From Macrostomum lignano (taxonomy: Eukaryota), in the NCBI GenBank assembly GCA_002269645.1, contig NIVC01001456.1:62001-126000 (forward strand): a stretch of DNA of 64,000 nucleotides, written 5' to 3'. The notes under the pieces are model-generated. The model had not been told where the DNA came from, did no database searches, and saw only the letters and a program-made list of their open reading frames with translations. The stretch's first letter is position 1. Each line of letters begins with the position of its first letter. Below are positions 4,430-32,177 of the stretch, in pieces. The translations under genes were made by a program, and so were the position numbers.

Positions 4430-6728
4430 CTACAGCAGAGTGCAGCCTGAGCTTGACTTTCTGCAACAAAATACAGGCGGTGAGAGAATCAAGCAATTCC
4501 TGCTTTTCATTGTCTATGGCTTAACGATGACGTTAGGGGGTTAGAGAGCCCAGCTCAGTGGTTAGAGAGTCGGACGCACGACTTGAAGGTCGGGGGTTCG
4601 ATTCCCGATACCACTCGAACAATTTGTGTCCTTGAGCAAGACACTTAACTCTGCATTGGTTCGGTTCACCCAGCTGTAAAATGGGTGCCAGCATAAGCTG
4701 GGGTAATTGAGGGTGTGTGTGGCGAGCCCCCCCCCCATGTCCTTTAACTGAACAGCCGTACGCAGCCTTCAGATGTGCCGCGCAATAGCTGCGTTCGTGC
4801 TGTCGGTTGCATATATGGCCTAATTGAGGCAGGTGTACGCTCGTTATAAATTATTATTTCTACATGCACACTCGATTGTGCGGAGTGAAGTGATCGATAA
4901 AGTCTAAAATGCTATACTAGTATGCCTTTCGAATAGATGAATGAATCTGACCAAAGCATACCTTCGAGCGGTCGCCTGTTCCCGCTGCATCTCCGAGCGG
5001 ATTTCCATCAGCGGGTTCAGGTAGTTTCTGTTCAGCCAGCCCTGCGTGTAGGCCATGACCTCGATCAGCTTCTGGCTGCTGCCGACCTGTCGTTGCAGGG
5101 CCATCATGGCGGCGCCGCCAGACTGAATCCCGAGAGCGGTCAGTGTCTCGCTGAGCGACGAGAACTTGAGGAACATGTTGCATTTGTCTTCTGGGAGGCG
5201 GGACACTGGGATGAACAGTGGCCTGAATTGACAATGTTTGAATATTAGTGATTTATCGCGATAGATTTTTAATGAACGCATTATATGCATAGCTTAAAGA
5301 TGCGTAAGCGTGTTTTTTGTGCTGCAAGCGATATCTAAAACCGTGCTAAATGCTCTTTCAGCTTAAAAAATTAGAATTTAGCAAATAAAGCATTGAATTA
5401 CAACGAAGTTTATCTGGACAGAAGTTTTTTGCTTGGTTCAAATTAAAAACTCTACTTTTCCCCATCTGGTCCCAAAGGGAGAGCATTACGGCATATGCTT
5501 AGGATTATAAATGATTCTAGATTGTAGATTAGTAGTACGAGTAGCATAAAACGGCCGCAGGAAATTCCGTGGAAATACCGTGACTAGTTCGCGTACTAGA
5601 GAGATAGCTGGCAATGTTAAAAATAGTAGCGCCAGGACGATCAGCCGTTGCTCATTGAGAATAGAAGAGATAAAGTTTTGGGGGAAAGCGCAGAAAGAGG
5701 TGTGCACAGGTGGCAGCCCTATAATTGCTTAAGGCTTACAAGCCATTGAGCACCAGATATTGAGCAACTATTGCAACTATAACCATTTCTCAGTAAGCCA
5801 CGCCCTGGCAGTACTATCTTAAACATTGCCACGTATCTCTTCAGTAGATAAACTAGTAACGGAATTTCCACGGAATTTCCACGGATTTTCCCCAGTTGTC
5901 TTCTTTCAACTTCTAACTTCTTCTCTGCTTTGGGTAGGAAAATGTGAGCACAAATCTCTGTGTGAGCTTAGATTTCTGAACAATTTAGACTACTGAAAAA
6001 GTAGCCGAATAAGGATTTGAATCGCAAACTTTTACCGCATAAAAAGAAACGTCTGTAAAGACTGAGAGTGGTGGGAGAGGACGGGCGTATGACTGACTGA
6101 CGAAGGCAAACAATAAGCTAGAAATCCAGTGTCGATCTGCCAAAGCGAGGTTGGACCCCCACTTTTAGTGTGTCACACTGTGTCTAGACAAGGTTCCTAT
6201 CGAGGTACTTACTAACACTTACTTAGGTTACTCGCCTGTGTTAGAATTCTATTTAACTATCAGTATTAACAAATTGAATTTTTCATGCACACTACGGTAT
6301 GAGATTCGCTTCACATTCTTTTCTCACTACTCGACAGTAGACGTTCTTTTAATTGTATGGCGGCGTTGTTCCAGCCGTTCTTCAATACAACGGCTCTACG
6401 GCTAAGTTTGGTGATGTTGTCATTGATTACTTCTACTAATTTGAAAACAAGTCAGTGAACTACATCCCGGATGAGACTCCACTTACACCTTGTCGGGCGT
6501 GAGCTCCACAGCCAGACGAATCACTAGCAGTCTCTCGGAGCTGTCCAGACTGCGGTACAGCCTGTAGTTGGTGAGGTTGGCTGGCACGCAGTCGTCCAGC
6601 AGGCAGGAGATGCAGTGCAGGTAGTACATCAGCCTGGCCACATTGTCGTTTGGCACGTCTACCGTAGTGCCAGAGTTTTCAATGCGCAGTCGCTGGTTCT
6701 CAAATCGGGCAAGAGCTAACTGACTCAT
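4430..6728 (-). CDS. CaaX-family paralogue 2, 3 exons, 177 aa, ends RRKSSSGCTLL*
   Basis: Exons 6728-6487, 5222-4962 and 4460-4430. Both introns are phase 2 with GT-AG sites, giving a 534-nt open frame to TAG. Same exon structure as the paralogue at 13300-14090. Confidence 0.85.
4536..4815 (+). mobile_element. tRNA-derived SINE family 1 with a CORE(MIR)-like central domain
   Basis: A-box-like TGGTTAGAG and B-box GGTTCGATTCC, followed by GTGTCCTTGAGCAAGACACTTAAC...CTGTAAAATGGG. Three dispersed copies in the window. Confidence 0.8.
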
Positions 6729-8899: not shown

Positions 8900-9594
8900 C
8901 TTAGATTGTAACAGGAGATGAGACTTGGGTCTACGAATGGGATCCTGAGCTGAAGCGCCAGTCAGCACAGTGGCTTCCAAGGGGATCAGCAAGCCTGGAG
9001 AAGGTGCAGCGCAAGCAGAGTTCAACGAAGGTGATGCACATTATCTTCTTCGACGTCCGTGGCATTCTGGTGGACTGGTCTGTGCCAGTCGGTACCAAGG
9101 TGAACGCCGAATATTACAAATGGATTCTGCAGGAGAAACTGCGACCGGCGATCAGAAAGAAGCGACCTGGCTTGCTGGAGAGAGGCGTCATTTTTCATCA
9201 CGACAATGCGCCTGTGCACCGCGCCAGAAGAGTGGAAGAGCTCCTGGAGTCCTGGGACTGGGAAGTTCTGCCTCAGCCGCGCTATTCGCCTGACTTGGCT
9301 CCGGCGGACTTCTACGTTTTCCCAAGGATGAAGGAGAGTCTTCGTGGTCAACGTTTTGTCTCGGTGGAACAGATTAATAACAGTGCTTCATCAGCTCTCC
9401 GGCATCTGGCCATCGGCGGTTGCAGAACTGCCTTTGAGGCGTGGGTGCGCCGCTGGCAGAAGTACGTTGACCTCGGCGGCAAATTTGTAGAGTAACTATG
9501 AGTTCATTTTGCAGTTGAAAAGTTTTGTTTATTTTTGGGTCACTAGTTTGTCTTTTATAGCATAGCGAAACTTACTTTTGGGATAGCCCTCGTA
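8900..9594 (+). mobile_element. mariner (DD34D) transposon, 3' half with right TIR
   Basis: IVTGDETWVY, HHDNAP and YSPDLAPADF are present, with 34 residues between the second and third Asp. TIR ...CTTTTGGGATAGCCCTCG followed by TA at 9593-9594. The N-terminal half and left TIR are absent. Confidence 0.92.
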
Positions 9595-9744: not shown

Positions 9745-10412
9745 AAATCTAGAACCAGCTTAAACCACACGCCAGCTTCCGTCGGTCTGCTTTTGTTTCA
9801 GCAAGAAGCCGATTCCCTTCAATCGGGATGCATCCGTGTGAAAAGCTGTTAATTTGCGCTGGTCATAGTATGCAAGTGTGGGAGCGATTGCCAGTCGGCG
9901 ACGGGCTTCTTCAAACGCCGTTTGATGTTCGTCTCCAAATTGAAAAAGATTCTTCTCCGACAGAAGTGGTCTCAATGAAGCTGTGACTTCGGCGATTGCA
10001 GGCGTGAATGTGCCAACTTGGTTAACAAGGCAGAAGAAAGCTCAAAGATCTGTGATATTTTTTGGAGTTGGAAACTCGCGGATTGCTTTTACCAACTCCG
10101 GATTGATGCTGTAGCCATCAGCTGACACACGAAACCCAGCGAAGTCAACTTGCTGCTCACAGAAGACGAACTTCTTCTTATTTAAAGAGACTCCATTATC
10201 CTGACAGCATTTTAAGAATCTCCTTACTGACTGCATGTGCGACTCATTGTCGGAGGTTGCAATCAAGCAGTCATCAACGACATGTCGAACTTCTTTGAGT
10301 TCTTGAAAAGTTTGGTCTAGTCTTTGATTGTAGTTCTCTGATATGGAGCTAATTCCAAATGGTGCCATCTTGAACATTTAACGACCAAACGGTGTGATAA
10401 ACTGATAAACGA
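9745..10412 (-). mobile_element. Ty3/Gypsy-type LTR retrotransposon pol fragment (RT to start of RNase H), decayed
   Basis: APFGISS, VVDD (YxDD box), DFAGFRVS, FPTPKN and TDAS motifs in order, with an in-frame stop at 10042-10044. Confidence 0.88.
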
Positions 10413-15766: not shown

Positions 15767-18700
15767 TCAGGCATCGCCGATCAGGGCCAGAAGAATCTTG
15801 CGATAATCGCCGCTGGTGTCGTCCTTGATCCATTCGGCCAGGCTCTGCCCGAACTCCTTCTGGAAGGCGGTCTTGATCTGCACCATGTCCACCTCGCAGC
15901 GGCTGATCACGATGCGAAGCAGCGTCTTGTCGTTGGTGCCTGGAGACGAATAGAGGGCGTTGAATAGAGGATGTGCAACCGACAGCTCAGCCGCAGCTAT
16001 TGCGCGGCGCATCTGAAGGCTGCTGCGTACGGCTGTTCAGTCCAAGGGCTGGAGGGTCGTCACACACACCCTCAATTACCCCAGCTAATGCTGGCACCCA
16101 TTTTACCGCTGGGTGTTGAAGCAGTGAAGAGTTAAGTGTCTTGCTCAAGGACACAAATTGTTCCAGCGGGATCGGGGATCGAACCCCTGACCCCGTTCAG
16201 TCGTGAGTTCAACGCTCTAACCACTACGCTACAACCCTATCAAGCCCATTCAGGAATCCAGAGTGTCTCACTCGCTGACTGCGGATCGGTTGTCGCCTTG
16301 AATAGTTACAACATTAGGACAGATATTTTTGCCATCAACCCCTCCCTTTCACTTAAAGTGACACTTTAAATATAGAAAGTCTGAAAACCTCAAAGTTTTT
16401 TTACACAATGCTCAATTTCTTGAAAAATTTTCCTACATTGCTTGTCATGCTCGTTCTCCTTTTCTCTCTGATTGAGCATGATTGAGTCACTTACCCAAGC
16501 CCTTCATCGCCTTCTGCAGCGACTTAGCAAAGTAGGCCGGCTTGTTCTGAATGCAGCGGACCAGAGTCAGCATGGCGCGGAGCAGGTCGCCAGACATCTC
16601 CGCCTTCAAGGAGTCCTCGAGCGTCTTGCCGGTAAGCTTCTCGTATTCGGCAAACAGGGCGCGCAGGTGGGCGTTGTTGTTGCCGCAGAGGATCTCGTTG
16701 AACTTGCTCTCGTCCGTGCCCCACTTGCCGACGCCGGCCTCCTGCAGGGCCTGGGCGTCCTTCTTCACCTGCTCCGGATCGTAGGAGCTGCCCTCCGGCC
16801 GGGCGCCGGTGAGCAGAGACACCAGAATGCGCTTGAAGTGGCCGGATGTGTCCGACATAACGTCGTCCTCAAGTTCGCGATTGTAAGCTGAGTTTGGTGT
16901 GCGGTATTGGAGTGGAAGAGTTTTATTTTTTTTTTATTAGAGGCAGGGGGGTTGTGTGCACCCTGGCGCACTTTAAGCGACATAGGCACACAACCGGCGA
17001 GAGGCATTACTGCCCATTCCGCCGACTCCCCTGAGCAGGCATACAAGCGCGCGGATACGTACGCAGGCACACACTCAAACAGGAGTGTACAGCGGCCCTA
17101 ACTTTATATTATCGTTAGGCATGTACACTTCACTGCGCCTTGGGCGGTTGGCTCTCAAGGCCGTTAATTGCACGAGCAGAGCCAAGCCGAGATTCCAATT
17201 CAGCCCCAAATTAATGTGACTGCACTTGGAATCGAGCCTGGGTCGCTGGCACACCAGAGCAGCTGCGCTACCGCTGGGCTACGGCCCCCTTTGAGTCGAA
17301 GAGTTAGAGAGTTCATGACTCATTGGGATGGCATTGTTTTTAGTTTTTTTTAAGTGCGTGGTGTGTTTTGCCTTTCAGGGTCAGAGGGTGAGCTTTGTGA
17401 GCAAATAGTTGCTGTGTCCATAGTACGTAGTGTATTGTGCCCTTCAGGAGTCAGAGAGCTTTTCTGAACAAATCGTTCGGTTCCAGTAGATTAACTATCC
17501 ATCTGGAATGCTTATTTTGGCCCAGGGCATACAATATGAATCTGATCACTGAAAGCCGAGCAAACTCACTGGCTTTGTAGATTTTCTTGATCTCCTCGAT
17601 CTGGGCCTGCGTCCTGGTGCAGATGATCTCAATCAGGCAGTCCTCGTCCGTGCCCAGGCCCTTCACCGCCTCGCGAAGCTCTTTAGCGTCGTACTCGGCC
17701 GGTCCCAGGCACAGATTCTGGCAGATCTTGTTGAAATTGCCGCTCAGCTCGCTGTCCAACTCGCGTTTGAGATCTTTGCCGTATTTCATCTTGAAGGTGC
17801 GCACAATTTCCATACGCTGGGTGACGGTCCGATGGCCGAGCACGTTGATGATGCTCTCCTCGTTGGTGCCCAAACCTTTCATCGCCTTGCGCAGCTGCTC
17901 CGCATCGGCCGCGGCGCTGAAGTTCGGATACGGCTTCAGCGTGCCCTCCTGGACGTACTCCTCCTGCAAGAAGAAGGCCTCCCCGGCCGGCTCTGGTGGC
18001 TTTTCCTCCTTCAGCACAATGGCGTCCGCCTTCTCGTGGTCGGTCTTTTTCACCTGTAGAAAGTGCAATTTTGCAATTTTTGCAATACGTTCTGCTGCAG
18101 ACACCGATGACTAAAAGAACACACAGATCTAGTTATTCGCACCTCAGTCTCCATTTTGTGACTTGGCGGCGGTGGCGGCTTCTCCGCCTTCTTGGGCGGC
18201 GGCGGCGGGGGCGGCGGCGCAGGGTCCCTGCTGGCACTCTTTGAGGGAGGCATGAACGGCTTCGGTTTTGGATCCGAGCTCCGCTTGTTGATTGACTTTG
18301 GCGCGTGCAGCGGCTTCTTGTGCCCCGGCTTTGCGATGTGGATGGTCAGTAGGAATGAGTCGTCTGACTCGTCAAGTTCAGCTGACAGCACCTGCATCGG
18401 CAATGTGGAAAACTTCAAGCTTCTCATCGGCTTTAGAGTGACAGGCTCGGCGCGAGCAGGATAAAATTCTTAGAAATGAAGACCAATTTGATTATTTCAC
18501 GAGTAAGCTTACCTTGCCAAATTTCTGGTCCTCAATGGCAGCTTGAAATCCTCCATCTTTCCGCGCGAACTGCAGCAAGTGCGCGTAGACGTGCTGCAGC
18601 TGAGTTTTGAAGTCGCCGTCGCCCTTGCTGACGGGCAGGCAGGGCGGATCGGCGACGATCTTCTCAACCTTCTCAGTCTTCTTGGACTCTTCCACTAGGC

Positions 18701-20362
18701 GCCGGATGTCGTCCAGGGTGCTCTTGCGAGTCTCGTCCATGCGCTGCGACAGCTGTTGAGTCAGCTGGTTCAGCTGCTGCGGAGTCACGCCCTGTGGTGT
18801 GTTTTTTCGCAAATAGTAAGAAAATGTTGTGCCAGCACCAACTTTAAGTAGGTTTTCAAGTATGAGCCCCCCGATGTCCCTGACATTTTCACTCTGCAGT
18901 GTCCTCCCTCCCGTCCCGGCAGCATTCTAATCCAGCCACTCGTACGCTTGTAGCAAGCTTGGTGGCAGCGGGTCACTGCTGGCGTGAGCGCGTCAACTTT
19001 TACCATATTAGGGCCAATTTTTTCCTACGATTAGAAAACGTAACGCCTAAAGATGAGACAGTTTTTAGCGCACAGATTTCGCAGACCTGCCTTTTGCTCG
19101 TATGGGAAAAATTTTAAAGAAAAGGTCTGAAATTTTCGTGTTAGGAAGACACTTGGTGGCAATGAGAATGAACTTCAACCGTATCTTAGAGTTATCCAAA
19201 AGGTTTTAGCAACAATCTAAATTAGCAACTAGCGATCGTTGACGATATTTATAGATAAAGGCACTTGTTTTAGCAGGTAAAAATGCCTAAAATCGAAGCA
19301 TGACAAATTTTTGAGCAGCACGTTGAATGGAGCACGCATTACCTGCAGCGAAGGATCTGGCAAAGCGGGCACGGCGCTGGGCGGCTGGCCTGGGAAGCCG
19401 CCGCGGAAGTTCACATCGTTTGGGGTGCGCACCTCCCAGCCGAGGCCCCCGGTGGGACCGCCCGCTGCGCCGCCTCCGTACAGGTTGATCTGCGTGCCGG
19501 AGTGATTGACAGCTGAAAAGCCCTGGTCAGGCACCGACGAAGCTGAGAGATCGTCAGCCGGGTCTGTCCTTTCCCAGGCTTCGTACGGACCGCTGGCAGC
19601 TGCGGCAGCCGCCGAGGCACCGCCAGCACCGGAGCGGCGCAGGCGATCGCGGGAGTTGCTGCGTCCGCCGCCGCGGTTGCGCCGTCGCGTCCGAAGGCCG
19701 TCTTCGACGTCGCTGTCCCAGCTGGAAAGTTCGACGGGATTTCGAGGATATGAGGGTTAGGGTGTGTGCACCTGTATATATATATGTTCTCAGATGTATG
19801 TTCTATATGTTCTCATATATATATGTTCTCAGAGAAACGACCAATGCACTCTACCCATACTTCAGCAGCTACAACAGCACTGATCGCTCACCCATTAATA
19901 TCGGAGTTGCTGACGCTGCTCTGATCAAGGCAGTCGTCGATCTCGTTCCAACTGTGCACATCCTCGCAGTGATAGGTTCGTGAAGTGACAAAACTCTGCT
20001 GCTTGGTGACACGGTGCATGGCAACCGATTTGACAACGCGTTTGCCCGGCTTCAGGCAGAAAGGAGCTCGGTACTGGAATGTGACCTCGCGACCGTTCAA
20101 AAATCGCTTGTTGGGATCCGGTCGCGTGCCGTCGGTTGTGAAGAAAATGTTGCAGTTGTTGCTCTCTGAAACGTGCAACGGGTGTTTTCTAGATACACTT
20201 CACACAATTTAACTGATTAAATGAAACAAAAATCAAAATCAGTAACGCACCGGTGGACATTTCAATGTAGGTTGAGGTGTCGATGCAGGTGCTGGGCTTG
20301 CCATTAACGTGGCTCCTCAGCGGCGTGACGACTGGGGCGGCAATTCCGCCTGCGGACGGCAT
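15767..20362 (-). CDS. Annexin (4 repeats) with a ~470-aa N-terminal extension starting with a DZANK1-like Fn3-associated domain; ~780 aa
   Basis: Phase-consistent exons 20362-20251, 20165-19892, 19721-19343, 18791-18513, 18391-18143, 18053-17570, 16887-16495 and 15939-15767 (2343 nt). Four annexin repeats with GxGT loops (GLGTNE, GLGTDE, KWGTDE, GLGTND). An alternative in-frame acceptor at 18430 is possible. Confidence 0.9.
15971..16240 (-). mobile_element. SINE family 1 (CORE-like) copy in the last annexin intron
   Basis: Reverse complement of 4536-4815. It ends ~30 bp upstream of the splice acceptor. Confidence 0.85.
16921..17289 (-). mobile_element. SINE family 2, full-length copy with tRNA-like head and A-rich tail
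   Basis: Minus-strand head GGGGCCGTAGCCCAGCGGTAGCGC...GGCTCGATTCC (A and B boxes). The 3' ~90 nt resemble the LINE 3' UTR at 8283-8372. Ends in TAATAAAAAAAAAATAAAA. Confidence 0.8.
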
Positions 20363-21478: not shown

Positions 21479-22108
21479 ATGGAACCTAGAACATCAAACT
21501 GGGACGTTTCAAAACGTTATAAAACAGACGTTCTGATCGGAAATTGGTTTGAAGAACGACTAGTGTACGATAGAAAGAACCATACGCATCCATCGAGCTA
21601 CAGCATCGACTTTCAACAAAGGGGATACCAGCAGCCAGATGTTGTGCTTCGAAGGAACGGCTGGATTCGCTCTAACGGAGTAGGTAAGGAAATACTGCTA
21701 GCCCATCACGGCGATGCCTACAAGAAAAACTGGATCACTTGGTACGACGAGGACTTCAACGGCCGAGGCTTGCCTAGGAACCCCCCGCAGCGCGACTGGC
21801 ACTCAGGCAACATGGCCTGGAGCCCGGAGCGCTCAGACTTCCCCGTCCAGGGCAGCCCGACCAACTGGGGCTTGAAGGAAAGGCTAGACAAGCGATGGAA
21901 TACCAGTCTACAAGAGCGCTCGACCACGTCAAAGAATGACTTCAGTACTACGTACAACGCGTCATATCTGAAGCCGAGAACGGAGGACTTGCTGGCTGCA
22001 CGACAGCCGAGCTTCCTGCCACCAATCAGCGGGAGGATGCCGGCAAACACCGGCAGTCAGGACAAGTTCGAGGAGCCGGCCCAGAAGCTGTCAGTCGTGG
22101 CCACCTAG
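21479..22108 (+). CDS. CFAP107: Cilia- and flagella-associated protein 107 (C1orf158) homologue, intronless, 209 aa
   Basis: Motifs W...Y...VLIGNWFEER, LLAHH, YDEDFN, PPQRDW..WSPERSDFP..PTNWGL follow the order I recall for human C1orf158. Confidence 0.85.
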   Translation: MEPRTSNWDVSKRYKTDVLIGNWFEERLVYDRKNHTHPSSYSIDFQQRGYQQPDVVLRRNGWIRSNGVGKEILLAHHGDAYKKNWITWYDEDFNGRGLPRNPPQRDWHSGNMAWSPERSDFPVQGSPTNWGLKERLDKRWNTSLQERSTTSKNDFSTTYNASYLKPRTEDLLAARQPSFLPPISGRMPANTGSQDKFEEPAQKLSVVAT

Positions 22109-22479
22109 ACAGCCGCGGTTCTTATACGTTAGCTTGTACCAATACCGAACAATCAGCAGACCTTTGCTATTTGGCCTACTCTTTTTGACAGACTTTTCGC
22201 AAATGGATATCGAATTTCTGAACGGCAACAAACAGAAAAATACATCTTATTTTCACTATTGAACTCTGGCCAAGTACTGCGTGCGAATCAAATTCAGTCC
22301 TTTATGTATAGTAGATGGCTAAGTGTGAAACGTCACTTCCAGGACCTAGTGCATGTATACGCCTCAACATGAGAACTTGACACTCGTAACAGTTTGTGCG
22401 GCACAGTTAGCAAATATAAATTCAAAAGCTCACTCATGCTGCCTTCCTACGCTCGTTTTTTCTTGAAGCACTTGAAGCA

Positions 22480-23075
22480 GTGATGGATGGATGAAGCAGT
22501 GATGGATGGATGAAGCAGTGATGGATGGATGAAGCTCTGATATGGATGGATGAAGCACTGATATGGATAGATGAAGCTCTGATATGGATGGATGAAGCAC
22601 TGATATGGATGGATGAAGCACTGATATGGATGGATGAAGCTCTGATATGGATGGATGAAGCACTGATATGGATGAATGAAGCACTGATATGGATAGATGA
22701 AGCTCTGATATGGATGGATGAAGCACTGATATGGATGGATGAAGCACTGATATGGATAGATGAGGCACTGATATGGATGGATGAAGCTCTGATATGGATG
22801 GATGAAGCACTGATATGGATGGATGAAGCACTGATATGAATGGATGAAGCACTGAAATGGATGGATGAAGCACTGATATGGATGGATGAAGCACTGATAT
22901 GGATGGATGAAGCATTTATATCGATGGATGAAGCATTGATATGGATGGATGGATGAAGCAGTGAAATGGATGGATGAAGCAGTGAAATGGATGGATGAAG
23001 CATTTATATGGATGGATGAAGCAGTGATATGGATTGATGAAGCAGTGATATGGATGGATGGATGAAGCAGTGATC
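22480..23075. repeat. 21-bp minisatellite (GATATGGATGGATGAAGCACT)n
   Basis: Read directly; source of the WMDEALI, LHPSISV and ASSIHIS ORFs. Confidence 0.95.

Positions 23076-24163: not shown

Positions 24164-32177
<8,014 letters not shown>

What the first reader, a model, noticed from the sequence alone, without database searches (positions are those of the whole stretch)
15767..20362. Annexin fused to a DZANK1-like N-terminal domain
Seen: the first two exons encode MPSAGGIAAPVVTPLR..GKPSTCIDTSTYIEMSTESNNCNIFFTTDGTRP..TFQYRAPFCLKPGKRVVKSVAM..QSFVTSRTYH. A disordered region, a coiled-coil-like segment, an unassigned ~55-aa block (HVYAHLLQFARKDGGF...SFLLTIHIAKP) and a polyproline linker follow, then a complete four-repeat annexin core. 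All eight exons join in phase. Established, from my recollection of the human sequence: DZANK1 begins MTAGSVCVPQIIPLR..GK..IDNNT..EM..NIYYTLDGSKP..TFKY..P..L..GK..VKAIA, an Fn3-associated/CHB_HEX_C_1-type fold, and DZANK1 functions in ciliary and photoreceptor transport. Typical annexin N-termini are short or low-complexity. Inference: exon shuffling replaced the zinc-ribbon/ankyrin part with a Ca2+/phospholipid-binding module, giving a possible ciliary membrane adaptor.
Basis: partly seen in the sequence, partly recalled or inferred. Interest (0 to 1): 0.85.

Follow-up and report, generated by a model that had tools for sequence, protein, structure and literature searches.

The report
Annexin with a DZANK1-derived head
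This flatworm gene really does encode an annexin (a calcium-dependent membrane binder) joined to most of the scaffold of the ciliary-base protein DZANK1; the fusion is not a local novelty but an old, apparently undescribed protein family found in many invertebrate phyla, living alongside the ordinary DZANK1.

Summary
Eight GT-AG exons on the minus strand (20362-15767) join in frame into a 780-aa protein. A 98%-identical 775-aa protein is annotated in Macrostomum lignano. Residues 1-105 match the N-terminus of human DZANK1 (E 2e-14) and Pfam Fn3_assoc. The C-terminus is a complete four-repeat annexin core with three intact type II Ca2+ sites.

- The "unassigned" block also matches DZANK1 (human residues 455-546), so two DZANK1 modules are kept in order. 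The zinc ribbons and ankyrin repeats are absent.
- The same architecture occurs in many flatworms and in a brachiopod, a nemertean, snails and a priapulid. A starfish and an acorn worm carry it with ankyrin repeats retained. The protostome fusions form a clade (91% NJ bootstrap) separate from canonical DZANK1.
- M. lignano also has a canonical DZANK1.

So this is an ancient paralogue, not a recent exon shuffle.

One transcript is strongly supported: short introns, no intron 5 in the paralogue, and dN/dS of 0.13-0.25 wherever calculable.

The function is inferred. It is probably a dimeric scaffold, possibly LC8-binding through a conserved SGTQ(I/V)N motif, that tethers acidic membranes to ciliary-base microtubule or dynein machinery in a Ca2+-dependent way. 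No searched paper describes the family.

The parts
20251..20362 (-). Exon 1 (aa 1-37, phase 1 at the 3' end). The ATG at 20362 is directly preceded by a splice-acceptor-like ttaacatttcag.
   Evidence: Orthologues from other phyla start with the same MP(S/x)AG motif, so this is the conserved start.
19892..20165 (-). Exon 2 (aa 38-128). With exon 1 it encodes the DZANK1-type N-terminal Ig/Fn3-like beta-sandwich (aa 1-105, 19963-20362).
   Evidence: pLDDT 93-98.
19343..19721 (-). Exon 3 (aa 129-255): disordered, Gly/Ala/Arg-rich. It contains the conserved motif below.
   Evidence: pLDDT below 50.
19475..19507 (-). Conserved linear motif NHSGTQINLYG (aa 201-211), a candidate LC8/DYNLL-binding site.
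   Evidence: N[HY][SN]GTQ[IV]N[LVI][WYF]G is present in the fusion proteins of flatworms, brachiopod, nemertean, snail and priapulid; its position is 87-112 residues before the central block. Binding was not tested.
18513..18791 (-). Exon 4 (aa 256-348). It encodes the long helix (aa about 259-293, 18678-18782) and the first part of the DZANK1 central block.
18143..18391 (-). Exon 5 (aa 349-431). It encodes the end of the DZANK1-type central block (the block spans aa about 302-372, 18320-18653) and the start of the Pro-rich linker.
   Evidence: match to human DZANK1 455-546; profile score 87 bits.
17570..18053 (-). Exon 6 (aa 432-592). It encodes the rest of the linker, the conserved pre-core motif EEYVQEGTLKP, annexin repeat 1 and most of repeat 2. 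It is fused with exon 5 in the paralogue.
16495..16887 (-). Exon 7 (aa 593-723): end of annexin repeat 2, repeat 3 and the start of repeat 4.
15767..15939 (-). Exon 8 (aa 724-780 plus the TGA stop at 15767-15769): annexin repeat 4.
15770..17942 (-). Annexin core (aa 469-780, introns included). K-G-L-G-T ... D/E type II Ca2+-site signatures start at aa 491, 563 and 722.

Best explanation
SHOWN. This is one intact, selected gene of Macrostomum lignano encoding a 780-aa protein. It belongs to an old paralogue lineage of DZANK1 that is at least protostome-wide, with a related form in echinoderms and hemichordates.

The lineage keeps these DZANK1 parts:
- the N-terminal beta-sandwich
- a conserved short motif in a disordered stretch
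- a long helix
- the roughly 70-aa alpha/beta central block

It lacks the double zinc ribbons, which are the region of human DZANK1 that binds NINL. In protostomes it also lacks the ankyrin repeats. At the end of a flexible Pro-rich linker of about 95 residues it carries a canonical four-repeat annexin core with intact Ca2+ sites in repeats 1, 2 and 4.

INFERRED. The head works like DZANK1. It would dimerise, and it may recruit an LC8/DYNLL dimer through SGTQ(I/V)N. That would place it on microtubule or dynein machinery at the ciliary base or transition zone. The annexin core would bind acidic phospholipid membranes when Ca2+ rises.

The protein would then be a Ca2+-switchable tether between a membrane (transport vesicle, periciliary or ciliary membrane) and the DZANK1/LC8 scaffold. 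In effect it hard-wires a cargo or membrane link where canonical DZANK1 has its NINL-binding zinc ribbons and its ankyrin repeats.
For: Gene model and domains.

Single transcription unit:
- Introns 4 and 5, which separate the DZANK1-type block from the annexin exon, are only 121 and 89 nt.
- The M. lignano paralogue P0002 has no intron 5, so one 697-nt exon encodes the end of the central block, the linker and annexin repeats 1-2.
- pN is far below pS in every module. dN/dS is 0.13-0.25 in the four modules where dS could be calculated; synonymous sites are saturated in the N-terminal module (pN 0.17, pS 0.81).
- An independent public model gives the same protein.

Conservation of the architecture:
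- Fusion proteins occur in Schistosoma, Trichobilharzia, Heterobilharzia, Echinostoma, Paragonimus, Anoplocephala, Cichlidogyrus, Lingula, Tubulanus, Bradybaena, Candidula and Priapulus.
- Asterias has the fusion with ankyrin repeats retained, and a Saccoglossus ANK + annexin fragment matches its C-terminal half.

Paralogy:
- Canonical DZANK1 is present in M. lignano, Taenia, Clonorchis and Tubulanus.
- The protostome fusions form a clade with 91% NJ bootstrap.

Function of the parts:
- Human DZANK1 binds DYNLL1/2 and localises to the basal body. NINL binds its ZNF_RBZ domains (PMC4617706).
- A DZANK1 dimer plus an LC8 dimer were assigned as MAPs on the A-tubule of the transition-zone doublet (bioRxiv 10.64898/2026.06.11.731632).
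- Of 59 canonical DZANK1 sequences, 49 have a TQT between the head and the central block. The fusions have an almost invariant GTQ(I/V)N instead.
- K-G-x-G-T-38-D/E sites are intact.

Circumstantial: the gene sits head-to-head, 1116 bp apart, with a gene for the ciliary protein CFAP107.
Against: - No expression, localisation or binding data exist for this protein or any orthologue in the searched literature.
- The motif is TQI/TQV, not TQT. In protostome fusions it lies about 60 residues further from the central block than the TQT of canonical DZANK1, so neither homology of the motif nor LC8 binding is established.
- The DZANK1 assignment in the transition-zone map rests on AI docking at modest resolution.
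- Which DZANK1 part contacts microtubules is not known to me, so the fusion may lack it.
- The CFAP107 adjacency is absent at the paralogue locus, and no X-box was found in the spacer.
- The annexin core is of the generic A4/A7/A11/B12-like type, which acts in many non-ciliary processes.
Confidence: 0.55

Rival explanations
1. It is a general-purpose annexin working in membrane repair, exocytosis or endosome traffic. The DZANK1-derived head only supplies dimerisation or regulation, much as the long N-termini of annexins A7 and A11 do. There is no specific link to cilia or dynein.
For: - The core is 53-63% identical to ordinary A4/A7/A11/B12-like annexins.
- The NINL-binding zinc ribbons are missing.
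- The TQ motif is non-canonical and displaced.
- The family is kept in parasitic flatworms.
- From my own knowledge, not tested here: adult neodermatans have few ciliated cell types.
Against: - Four distinct DZANK1 elements (head, motif, helix, central block) are kept in order across several phyla. That is more than a dimerisation handle would need.
- The only experimentally known roles of these elements are at the ciliary base with DYNLL.
Confidence: 0.3
2. It is a recent, lineage-specific exon-shuffling product of flatworms or spiralians that replaced the C-terminal half of DZANK1.
For: The domain order N-terminal head ... annexin is compatible with a 3' replacement. The exon 5/6 junction is phase 0.
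Against: - The same architecture is found in Priapulida (Ecdysozoa), Brachiopoda, Nemertea and Mollusca, and with ANK in Asterias and Saccoglossus.
- The protostome fusions are monophyletic and distinct from the canonical DZANK1 of the same phyla.
- Canonical DZANK1 coexists in M. lignano.
Confidence: 0.03
3. It is an annotation artefact: two adjacent genes, a truncated DZANK1-like gene and an annexin, that merely can be spliced in frame.
For: No transcript data could be examined here. M. lignano uses spliced-leader trans-splicing (my own knowledge), so closely spaced genes on one strand are possible in principle.
Against: - Introns 4 and 5 are 121 and 89 nt, leaving no room for an intergenic region.
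- The paralogue encodes the end of the central block, the linker and annexin repeats 1-2 in one exon.
- Exon 6 has no start codon that would give a complete repeat 1.
- The conserved EEY..EGTLKP pre-core motif is shared across phyla.
- Gene models carrying the fusion come from at least 12 genera, including RefSeq models.
- Purifying selection is uniform.
Confidence: 0.03

Closest known systems
[quoted passage not shown]
   Same: - N-terminal Fn3_assoc/CHB_HEX_C_1-type beta-sandwich (E 2e-14).
- A central alpha/beta block (human 455-546).
- Both are preceded by a disordered stretch with a TQ-type motif and a helix.
- The elements are in the same order.
   Different: - No double zinc ribbons, which are the NINL-binding region in human DZANK1.
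- No ankyrin repeats in the protostome form.
- The motif is TQI/TQV rather than TQTVGLFYP, and it lies further upstream.
- An annexin core sits at the C-terminus.
- It is a separate clade, and a canonical DZANK1 is encoded elsewhere in the same genome.
Annexins A11/A7 (and A4, invertebrate 'B12-like')
   Same: - Four-repeat core with about 50% identity and TM 0.94-0.96.
- Type II Ca2+ sites in repeats 1, 2 and 4.
- A long N-terminal extension joined by a Pro-rich, low-complexity segment.
- From my own knowledge: ANXA11 is an established membrane-to-cargo tether.
   Different: The extension here is about 470 residues and contains folded, conserved domains of DZANK1 origin. It is not only a Gly/Tyr/Pro low-complexity domain.
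Ambulacrarian 'DZANK1-like isoform X1' (Asterias rubens XP_033629438; Saccoglossus fragment)
   Same: DZANK1-type head and central block, no zinc ribbon, and a C-terminal annexin core.
   Different: - It retains ankyrin repeats between the central block and the annexin.
- It retains the canonical IGTQTVGLFYP motif.
- Grouping with the protostome fusions has only 21% bootstrap support, so common origin versus convergence is open.

Membership tests
Annexin (Pfam PF00191) | Four consecutive annexin repeats of about 70 aa | tested here: met
   four stretches, E 2.8e-93, 306 bits against a cut-off of 25.
Annexin (Pfam PF00191) | Annexin core fold (a disc of four five-helix repeats) | tested here: met
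   pLDDT about 90; Foldseek TM 0.94-0.96 to annexin A4 and A11.
Annexin (Pfam PF00191) | Type II Ca2+ site, (M/L)-K-G-x-G-T followed 38 residues later by D/E | tested here: met
   MKGLGT...E (aa 491), VKGLGT...D (aa 563) and MKGLGT...D (aa 722). These are conserved in most orthologues.
Annexin (Pfam PF00191) | Ca2+-dependent binding to acidic phospholipids | not testable with these tools
   Needs a liposome co-sedimentation assay.
Canonical DZANK1 | N-terminal Fn3_assoc/CHB_HEX_C_1-type domain | tested here: met
Canonical DZANK1 | Conserved central block (human 455-546) | tested here: met
   domain E 1e-4; family profile, 87 bits.
Canonical DZANK1 | Double zinc ribbon (PF12773 / ZNF_RBZ) | tested here: not met
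   One search gives no DZR hit. One search finds none in any fusion orthologue, against 50 of 66 canonical proteins.
Canonical DZANK1 | C-terminal ankyrin repeats | tested here: not met
   One search gives no Ank hit. Among the fusions, ankyrin repeats are present only in Asterias and Saccoglossus.
Canonical DZANK1 | TQT-type LC8/DYNLL motif before the central block | tested here: inconclusive
   GTQIN instead of TQTVGL, and 97 residues upstream rather than about 33. Binding was not tested.
Canonical DZANK1 | Orthology (same clade as DZANK1 of other animals) | tested here: not met
   a separate clade (91% bootstrap). M. lignano has its own canonical DZANK1 (P0026).
DZANK1-head annexins (no published name found) | Head + GTQ(I/V)N motif + helix + central block + Pro-rich linker + EEY..EGTLKP + annexin core, in this order | tested here: met
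   the elements align along the full length with proteins of flatworms, Lingula, Tubulanus, Bradybaena and Priapulus.

The most novel reading that the evidence does not exclude
The DZANK1-head annexins are a previously unrecognised class of Ca2+-switchable connectors between the ciliary or periciliary membrane (or incoming vesicles) and the LC8-decorated A-tubule surface of the transition zone. They would be widespread in invertebrates. They were not detected in vertebrates, where the job would be split among separate proteins.
Probability: 0.15. Interest if true: 0.75.

Novelty: new variant of a known kind. Interest (0 to 1): 0.5.

Why it matters
Annexins are usually described as a conserved core with a short or low-complexity N-terminus that sets partner specificity. 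Here a whole folded scaffold of a ciliary-base, dynein-light-chain-binding protein occupies that position. The arrangement has been kept for hundreds of millions of years in several phyla.

If the inferred mechanism holds, it gives a direct, testable molecular link between Ca2+-dependent membrane binding and the DZANK1/LC8 module at the ciliary base.

It also sharpens ideas about DZANK1 itself. The parts retained in the paralogue (head, TQ motif, helix, central block) are likely the core functional unit. The zinc ribbons and ankyrin repeats look like exchangeable cargo or partner modules.

M. lignano has transgenesis and RNAi (my own knowledge), so the tests are practical.

Practical point: orthologues are currently labelled 'annexin A11', 'annexin A7/11', 'DZANK1-like' or 'hypothetical protein', which hides the family.

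Tried and rejected
- Word-indexed homologue searches. With the low-complexity middle included, the search found only 5 proteins, probably because the candidate list was swamped. With the head profile alone it gave only fragments. The exhaustive profile search was needed.
- Foldseek of the head-plus-central-block model against the PDB gave only weak generic Ig/Fn3-like matches (best E 6e-3) and nothing for the central block. That PDB copy predates entry 11xu.
- RFX X-box scans found nothing in the 1.1-kb spacer shared with CFAP107. One low-stringency palindromic match lies in intron 2 at 19825-19838 and is not above suspicion.
- tRNA and Rfam scans of the tRNA-like sequences in introns 6 and 7 were negative.
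- Literature:
  - No meaningful paper combines annexin with DZANK1 or with 'Fn3 associated', and none mentions the locus tag.
  - The 2013 survey of parasite annexins does not mention a fused head, and no supplement is held for it.
- The search with the annexin core did not help to test a single origin, because double-core annexins (A6) outrank everything.
- The Batillaria 'ankyrin repeat protein' (P0032) was considered as a fusion-type relative without annexin. It groups with canonical DZANK1 in the tree.
Full report
1. THE OBSERVATION

On the minus strand, eight exons with canonical AG/GT boundaries give a 2343-nt CDS and a 780-aa protein with no internal stop. The exons are 20362-20251, 20165-19892, 19721-19343, 18791-18513, 18391-18143, 18053-17570, 16887-16495 and 15939-15767.

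Pfam finds four annexin repeats (E 2.8e-93). In the head it finds Fn3_assoc (aa 33-102) and CHB_HEX_C_1 (aa 27-93), both above the curated cut-offs. Residues 3-105 align to residues 2-103 of human DZANK1 (PDB chain 11xu_G1) at E 2.3e-14.

The organism is the flatworm Macrostomum lignano. A 98%-identical 775-aa protein (BOX15_Mlig000517g1) and a 58%-identical 764-aa paralogue are in NCBI. The published copies of the locus are 92-97% identical in DNA to the window. The window therefore represents another haplotype or gene copy.

The block called 'unassigned' (HVYAHLLQFARKDGGF...SFLLTIHIAKP) also matches DZANK1. The window protein's aa 292-383 align to human DZANK1 455-546 (domain E 1e-4). A family profile of this block scores 87 bits on P0001, the 98%-identical public copy. 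Two DZANK1 modules are therefore kept in their original order.

The double zinc ribbons, which lie between these modules in canonical DZANK1, are absent. So are the C-terminal ankyrin repeats.

AlphaFold2 with 48 family sequences gives this picture (P0001 numbering, which is window numbering minus 5):
- a confident beta-sandwich (pLDDT 93-98)
- a disordered stretch
- one long helix, 254-288 (pLDDT 83-89)
- a two-helix-plus-hairpin block, 311-362 (pLDDT 81-88)

The full-length model adds a disordered Pro-rich linker of about 95 residues and a high-confidence annexin core. The core superposes on annexin A4 and A11 at TM 0.94-0.96.

The K-G-x-G-T-38-D/E signature of type II Ca2+ sites is intact in repeats 1, 2 and 4.

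3. IS IT ONE GENE?

Five lines of evidence say yes.
- The introns between the DZANK1-type block and the annexin exon are 121 and 89 nt.
- Exon 6 carries 37 residues of linker, including the conserved EEY..EGTLKP motif, before repeat 1.
- In the M. lignano paralogue, intron 5 does not exist. One 697-nt exon encodes the end of the central block, the linker and annexin repeats 1-2.
- Between the two paralogues only the exons are alignable. pN is far below pS in every module, with dN/dS of 0.13 in the annexin core and 0.22-0.25 in the disordered, central and linker modules. Synonymous sites are saturated in the head (pN 0.17, pS 0.81).
- The same architecture appears in gene models from many species, including RefSeq models.

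No transcript data could be inspected, so this remains strong inference rather than proof.

4. DISTRIBUTION AND ORIGIN

An exhaustive profile search with the non-annexin part found 840 proteins at E below 1e-3. Among the best 150, those that also contain an annexin core come from these taxa:
- flatworms: Schistosoma, Trichobilharzia, Heterobilharzia, Echinostoma, Paragonimus, Anoplocephala and Cichlidogyrus
- the brachiopod Lingula
- the nemertean Tubulanus
- the snails Bradybaena and Candidula, with a doubled core
- the priapulid Priapulus
- the starfish Asterias

Head-only or middle-only fragments of the same type come from further cestodes, a trematode and a whelk.

None of the fusions has a zinc ribbon. 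The Asterias protein keeps ankyrin repeats (429-519) between the central block and the annexin. A Saccoglossus fragment (ANK + annexin) is 64% identical to its C-terminal half.

Of the other hits, the 66 of 420-1000 aa that were scanned are mostly canonical DZANK1: 50 have DZR and 38 have Ank_2. One of them is an 812-aa M. lignano protein, and others come from Taenia, Clonorchis and Tubulanus. The fusion and canonical DZANK1 therefore coexist in flatworms and nemerteans.

In a neighbour-joining tree of head plus central block (178 columns, 71 sequences):
- the protostome fusions form a clade with 91% bootstrap
- the flatworm fusions form a clade with 84% bootstrap
- adding Asterias is recovered in the best tree but has only 21% support

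The fusion is therefore at least as old as the protostomes. A single bilaterian origin is possible but not shown. No vertebrate fusion appeared among the top hits, although vertebrate canonical DZANK1 did. Absence is not proven, because only the best 150 representatives are listed.

5. HOW IT PROBABLY WORKS

Established for human and zebrafish DZANK1:
- It binds the dynein light chains DYNLL1 and DYNLL2.
- It sits at the basal body.
- It is needed, together with NINL, for vesicle transport to photoreceptor cilia.
- NINL binds its zinc-finger region (PMC4617706).

A 2026 preprint assigns a DZANK1 dimer with an LC8 dimer to the outer surface of the A-tubule of the transition-zone doublet. The assignment rests on AlphaFold-guided docking.

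LC8 recognises short strands anchored by TQT or variants of it (PMC6607443). Of 59 canonical DZANK1 sequences, 49 have a TQT between the head and the central block. It is typically TQTxGL, about 33 residues before the block.

The protostome fusions have an almost invariant N(H/Y)(S/N)GTQ(I/V)N(L/V/I)(W/Y/F)G, placed 87-112 residues before the block. The Asterias fusion has the canonical IGTQTVGLFYP.

My inference is that the head keeps DZANK1's self-association and possibly its LC8 binding, and loses NINL binding. Through a long flexible linker it gains a Ca2+-dependent grip on acidic membranes. The protein would then tether a membrane to the DZANK1/LC8 scaffold, either as a vesicle adaptor or as a static link at the ciliary base.

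The non-canonical, displaced motif and the lack of any expression data are the main weaknesses.

One circumstantial point: the gene lies head-to-head, 1116 bp away, with an intact CFAP107 gene (Pfam E 1e-51). The order TMC - CFAP107 - annexin is the same in two published contigs. This neighbour is absent at the paralogue locus, and I found no X-box in the spacer.

6. COMPARISON AND NOVELTY

The protein is a true annexin: every sequence and fold criterion is met. It is a DZANK1 homologue but not a DZANK1 orthologue. Two defining domains are absent and it falls in a different clade.

The nearest functional analogy is the A7/A11 type of annexin, where a long N-terminal region selects the partner. 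Here that region is a folded scaffold.

In the searched library I found nothing that describes this architecture:
- no paper linking annexin with DZANK1
- none linking annexin with Fn3_assoc
- nothing in the 2013 survey of parasite annexins

The proteins themselves are in public databases under uninformative or inconsistent names. I therefore rate it a new variant of a known kind, of moderate interest. It is real, ancient and testable, but its function is so far only inferred from its parts.

Noticed in passing
window 21479-22108 (+): An intact single-exon gene for CFAP107 (209 aa, Pfam PF22595, E 1e-51) lies head-to-head with the annexin gene across a 1116-bp AT-rich spacer. The order TMC - CFAP107 - annexin is the same in two contigs of GCA_002269645.1. 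The neighbour is absent at the paralogue locus.
   Followed up: partly
window about 16926-17292 (intron 6): An insertion of about 367 nt is absent from the published copy of the locus (L002). It begins with a tRNA-like head (GGGGGCCGTAGCCCAGCGGTAGCGC...). It looks like a SINE-type insertion polymorphism. ARAGORN and Rfam find nothing.
   Followed up: partly
window about 16160-16270 (intron 7) and 4595-4614: A second tRNA-like sequence has a B-box-like GGTTCGATCCCC at 16166-16185. A related copy (3 mismatches in 20 nt) lies at 4595-4614.
   Followed up: partly
L001 12465-13162 (M. lignano paralogue, NIVC01002018.1): The paralogue has seven exons. Window exons 5 and 6 correspond to a single 697-nt exon, so there is an intron-5 presence/absence difference between the paralogues.
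   Followed up: yes
L001 19105-24364: The downstream neighbour of the paralogue is a polycystin/PKD-channel gene. From my own knowledge, this family is often ciliary.
   Followed up: no
window 27079-27810 (-): An ORF has a weak TMC-domain match (E 9e-5). It is probably an exon of the TMC gene annotated beyond CFAP107 in L002 and L003.
   Followed up: partly
window 22430-23003 and 25061-25585: Two minisatellite-like arrays read as long repetitive ORFs on both strands (HPSISVL-type and GVT/CHS-type units).
   Followed up: no
window 9004-9495 (+) and 10042-10377 (-): Transposon debris. The first is a mariner-like DDE_3 transposase fragment (Pfam E 6e-7). The second ORF looks like part of a retroelement polymerase by eye and was not tested.
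   Followed up: partly
window 31460-31671 (+): A tandem array of a 9-bp unit (GTAACTCTA / GTCACTCTA) accounts for most of the excess of X-box-pattern matches in the window.
   Followed up: no
P0019 (Bradybaena) and P0023 (Priapulus): In a snail and a priapulid the fusion carries two or more annexin cores (8 and 11 repeats). This parallels the octad of vertebrate annexin A6. The Priapulus model may be partly mis-assembled.
   Followed up: no
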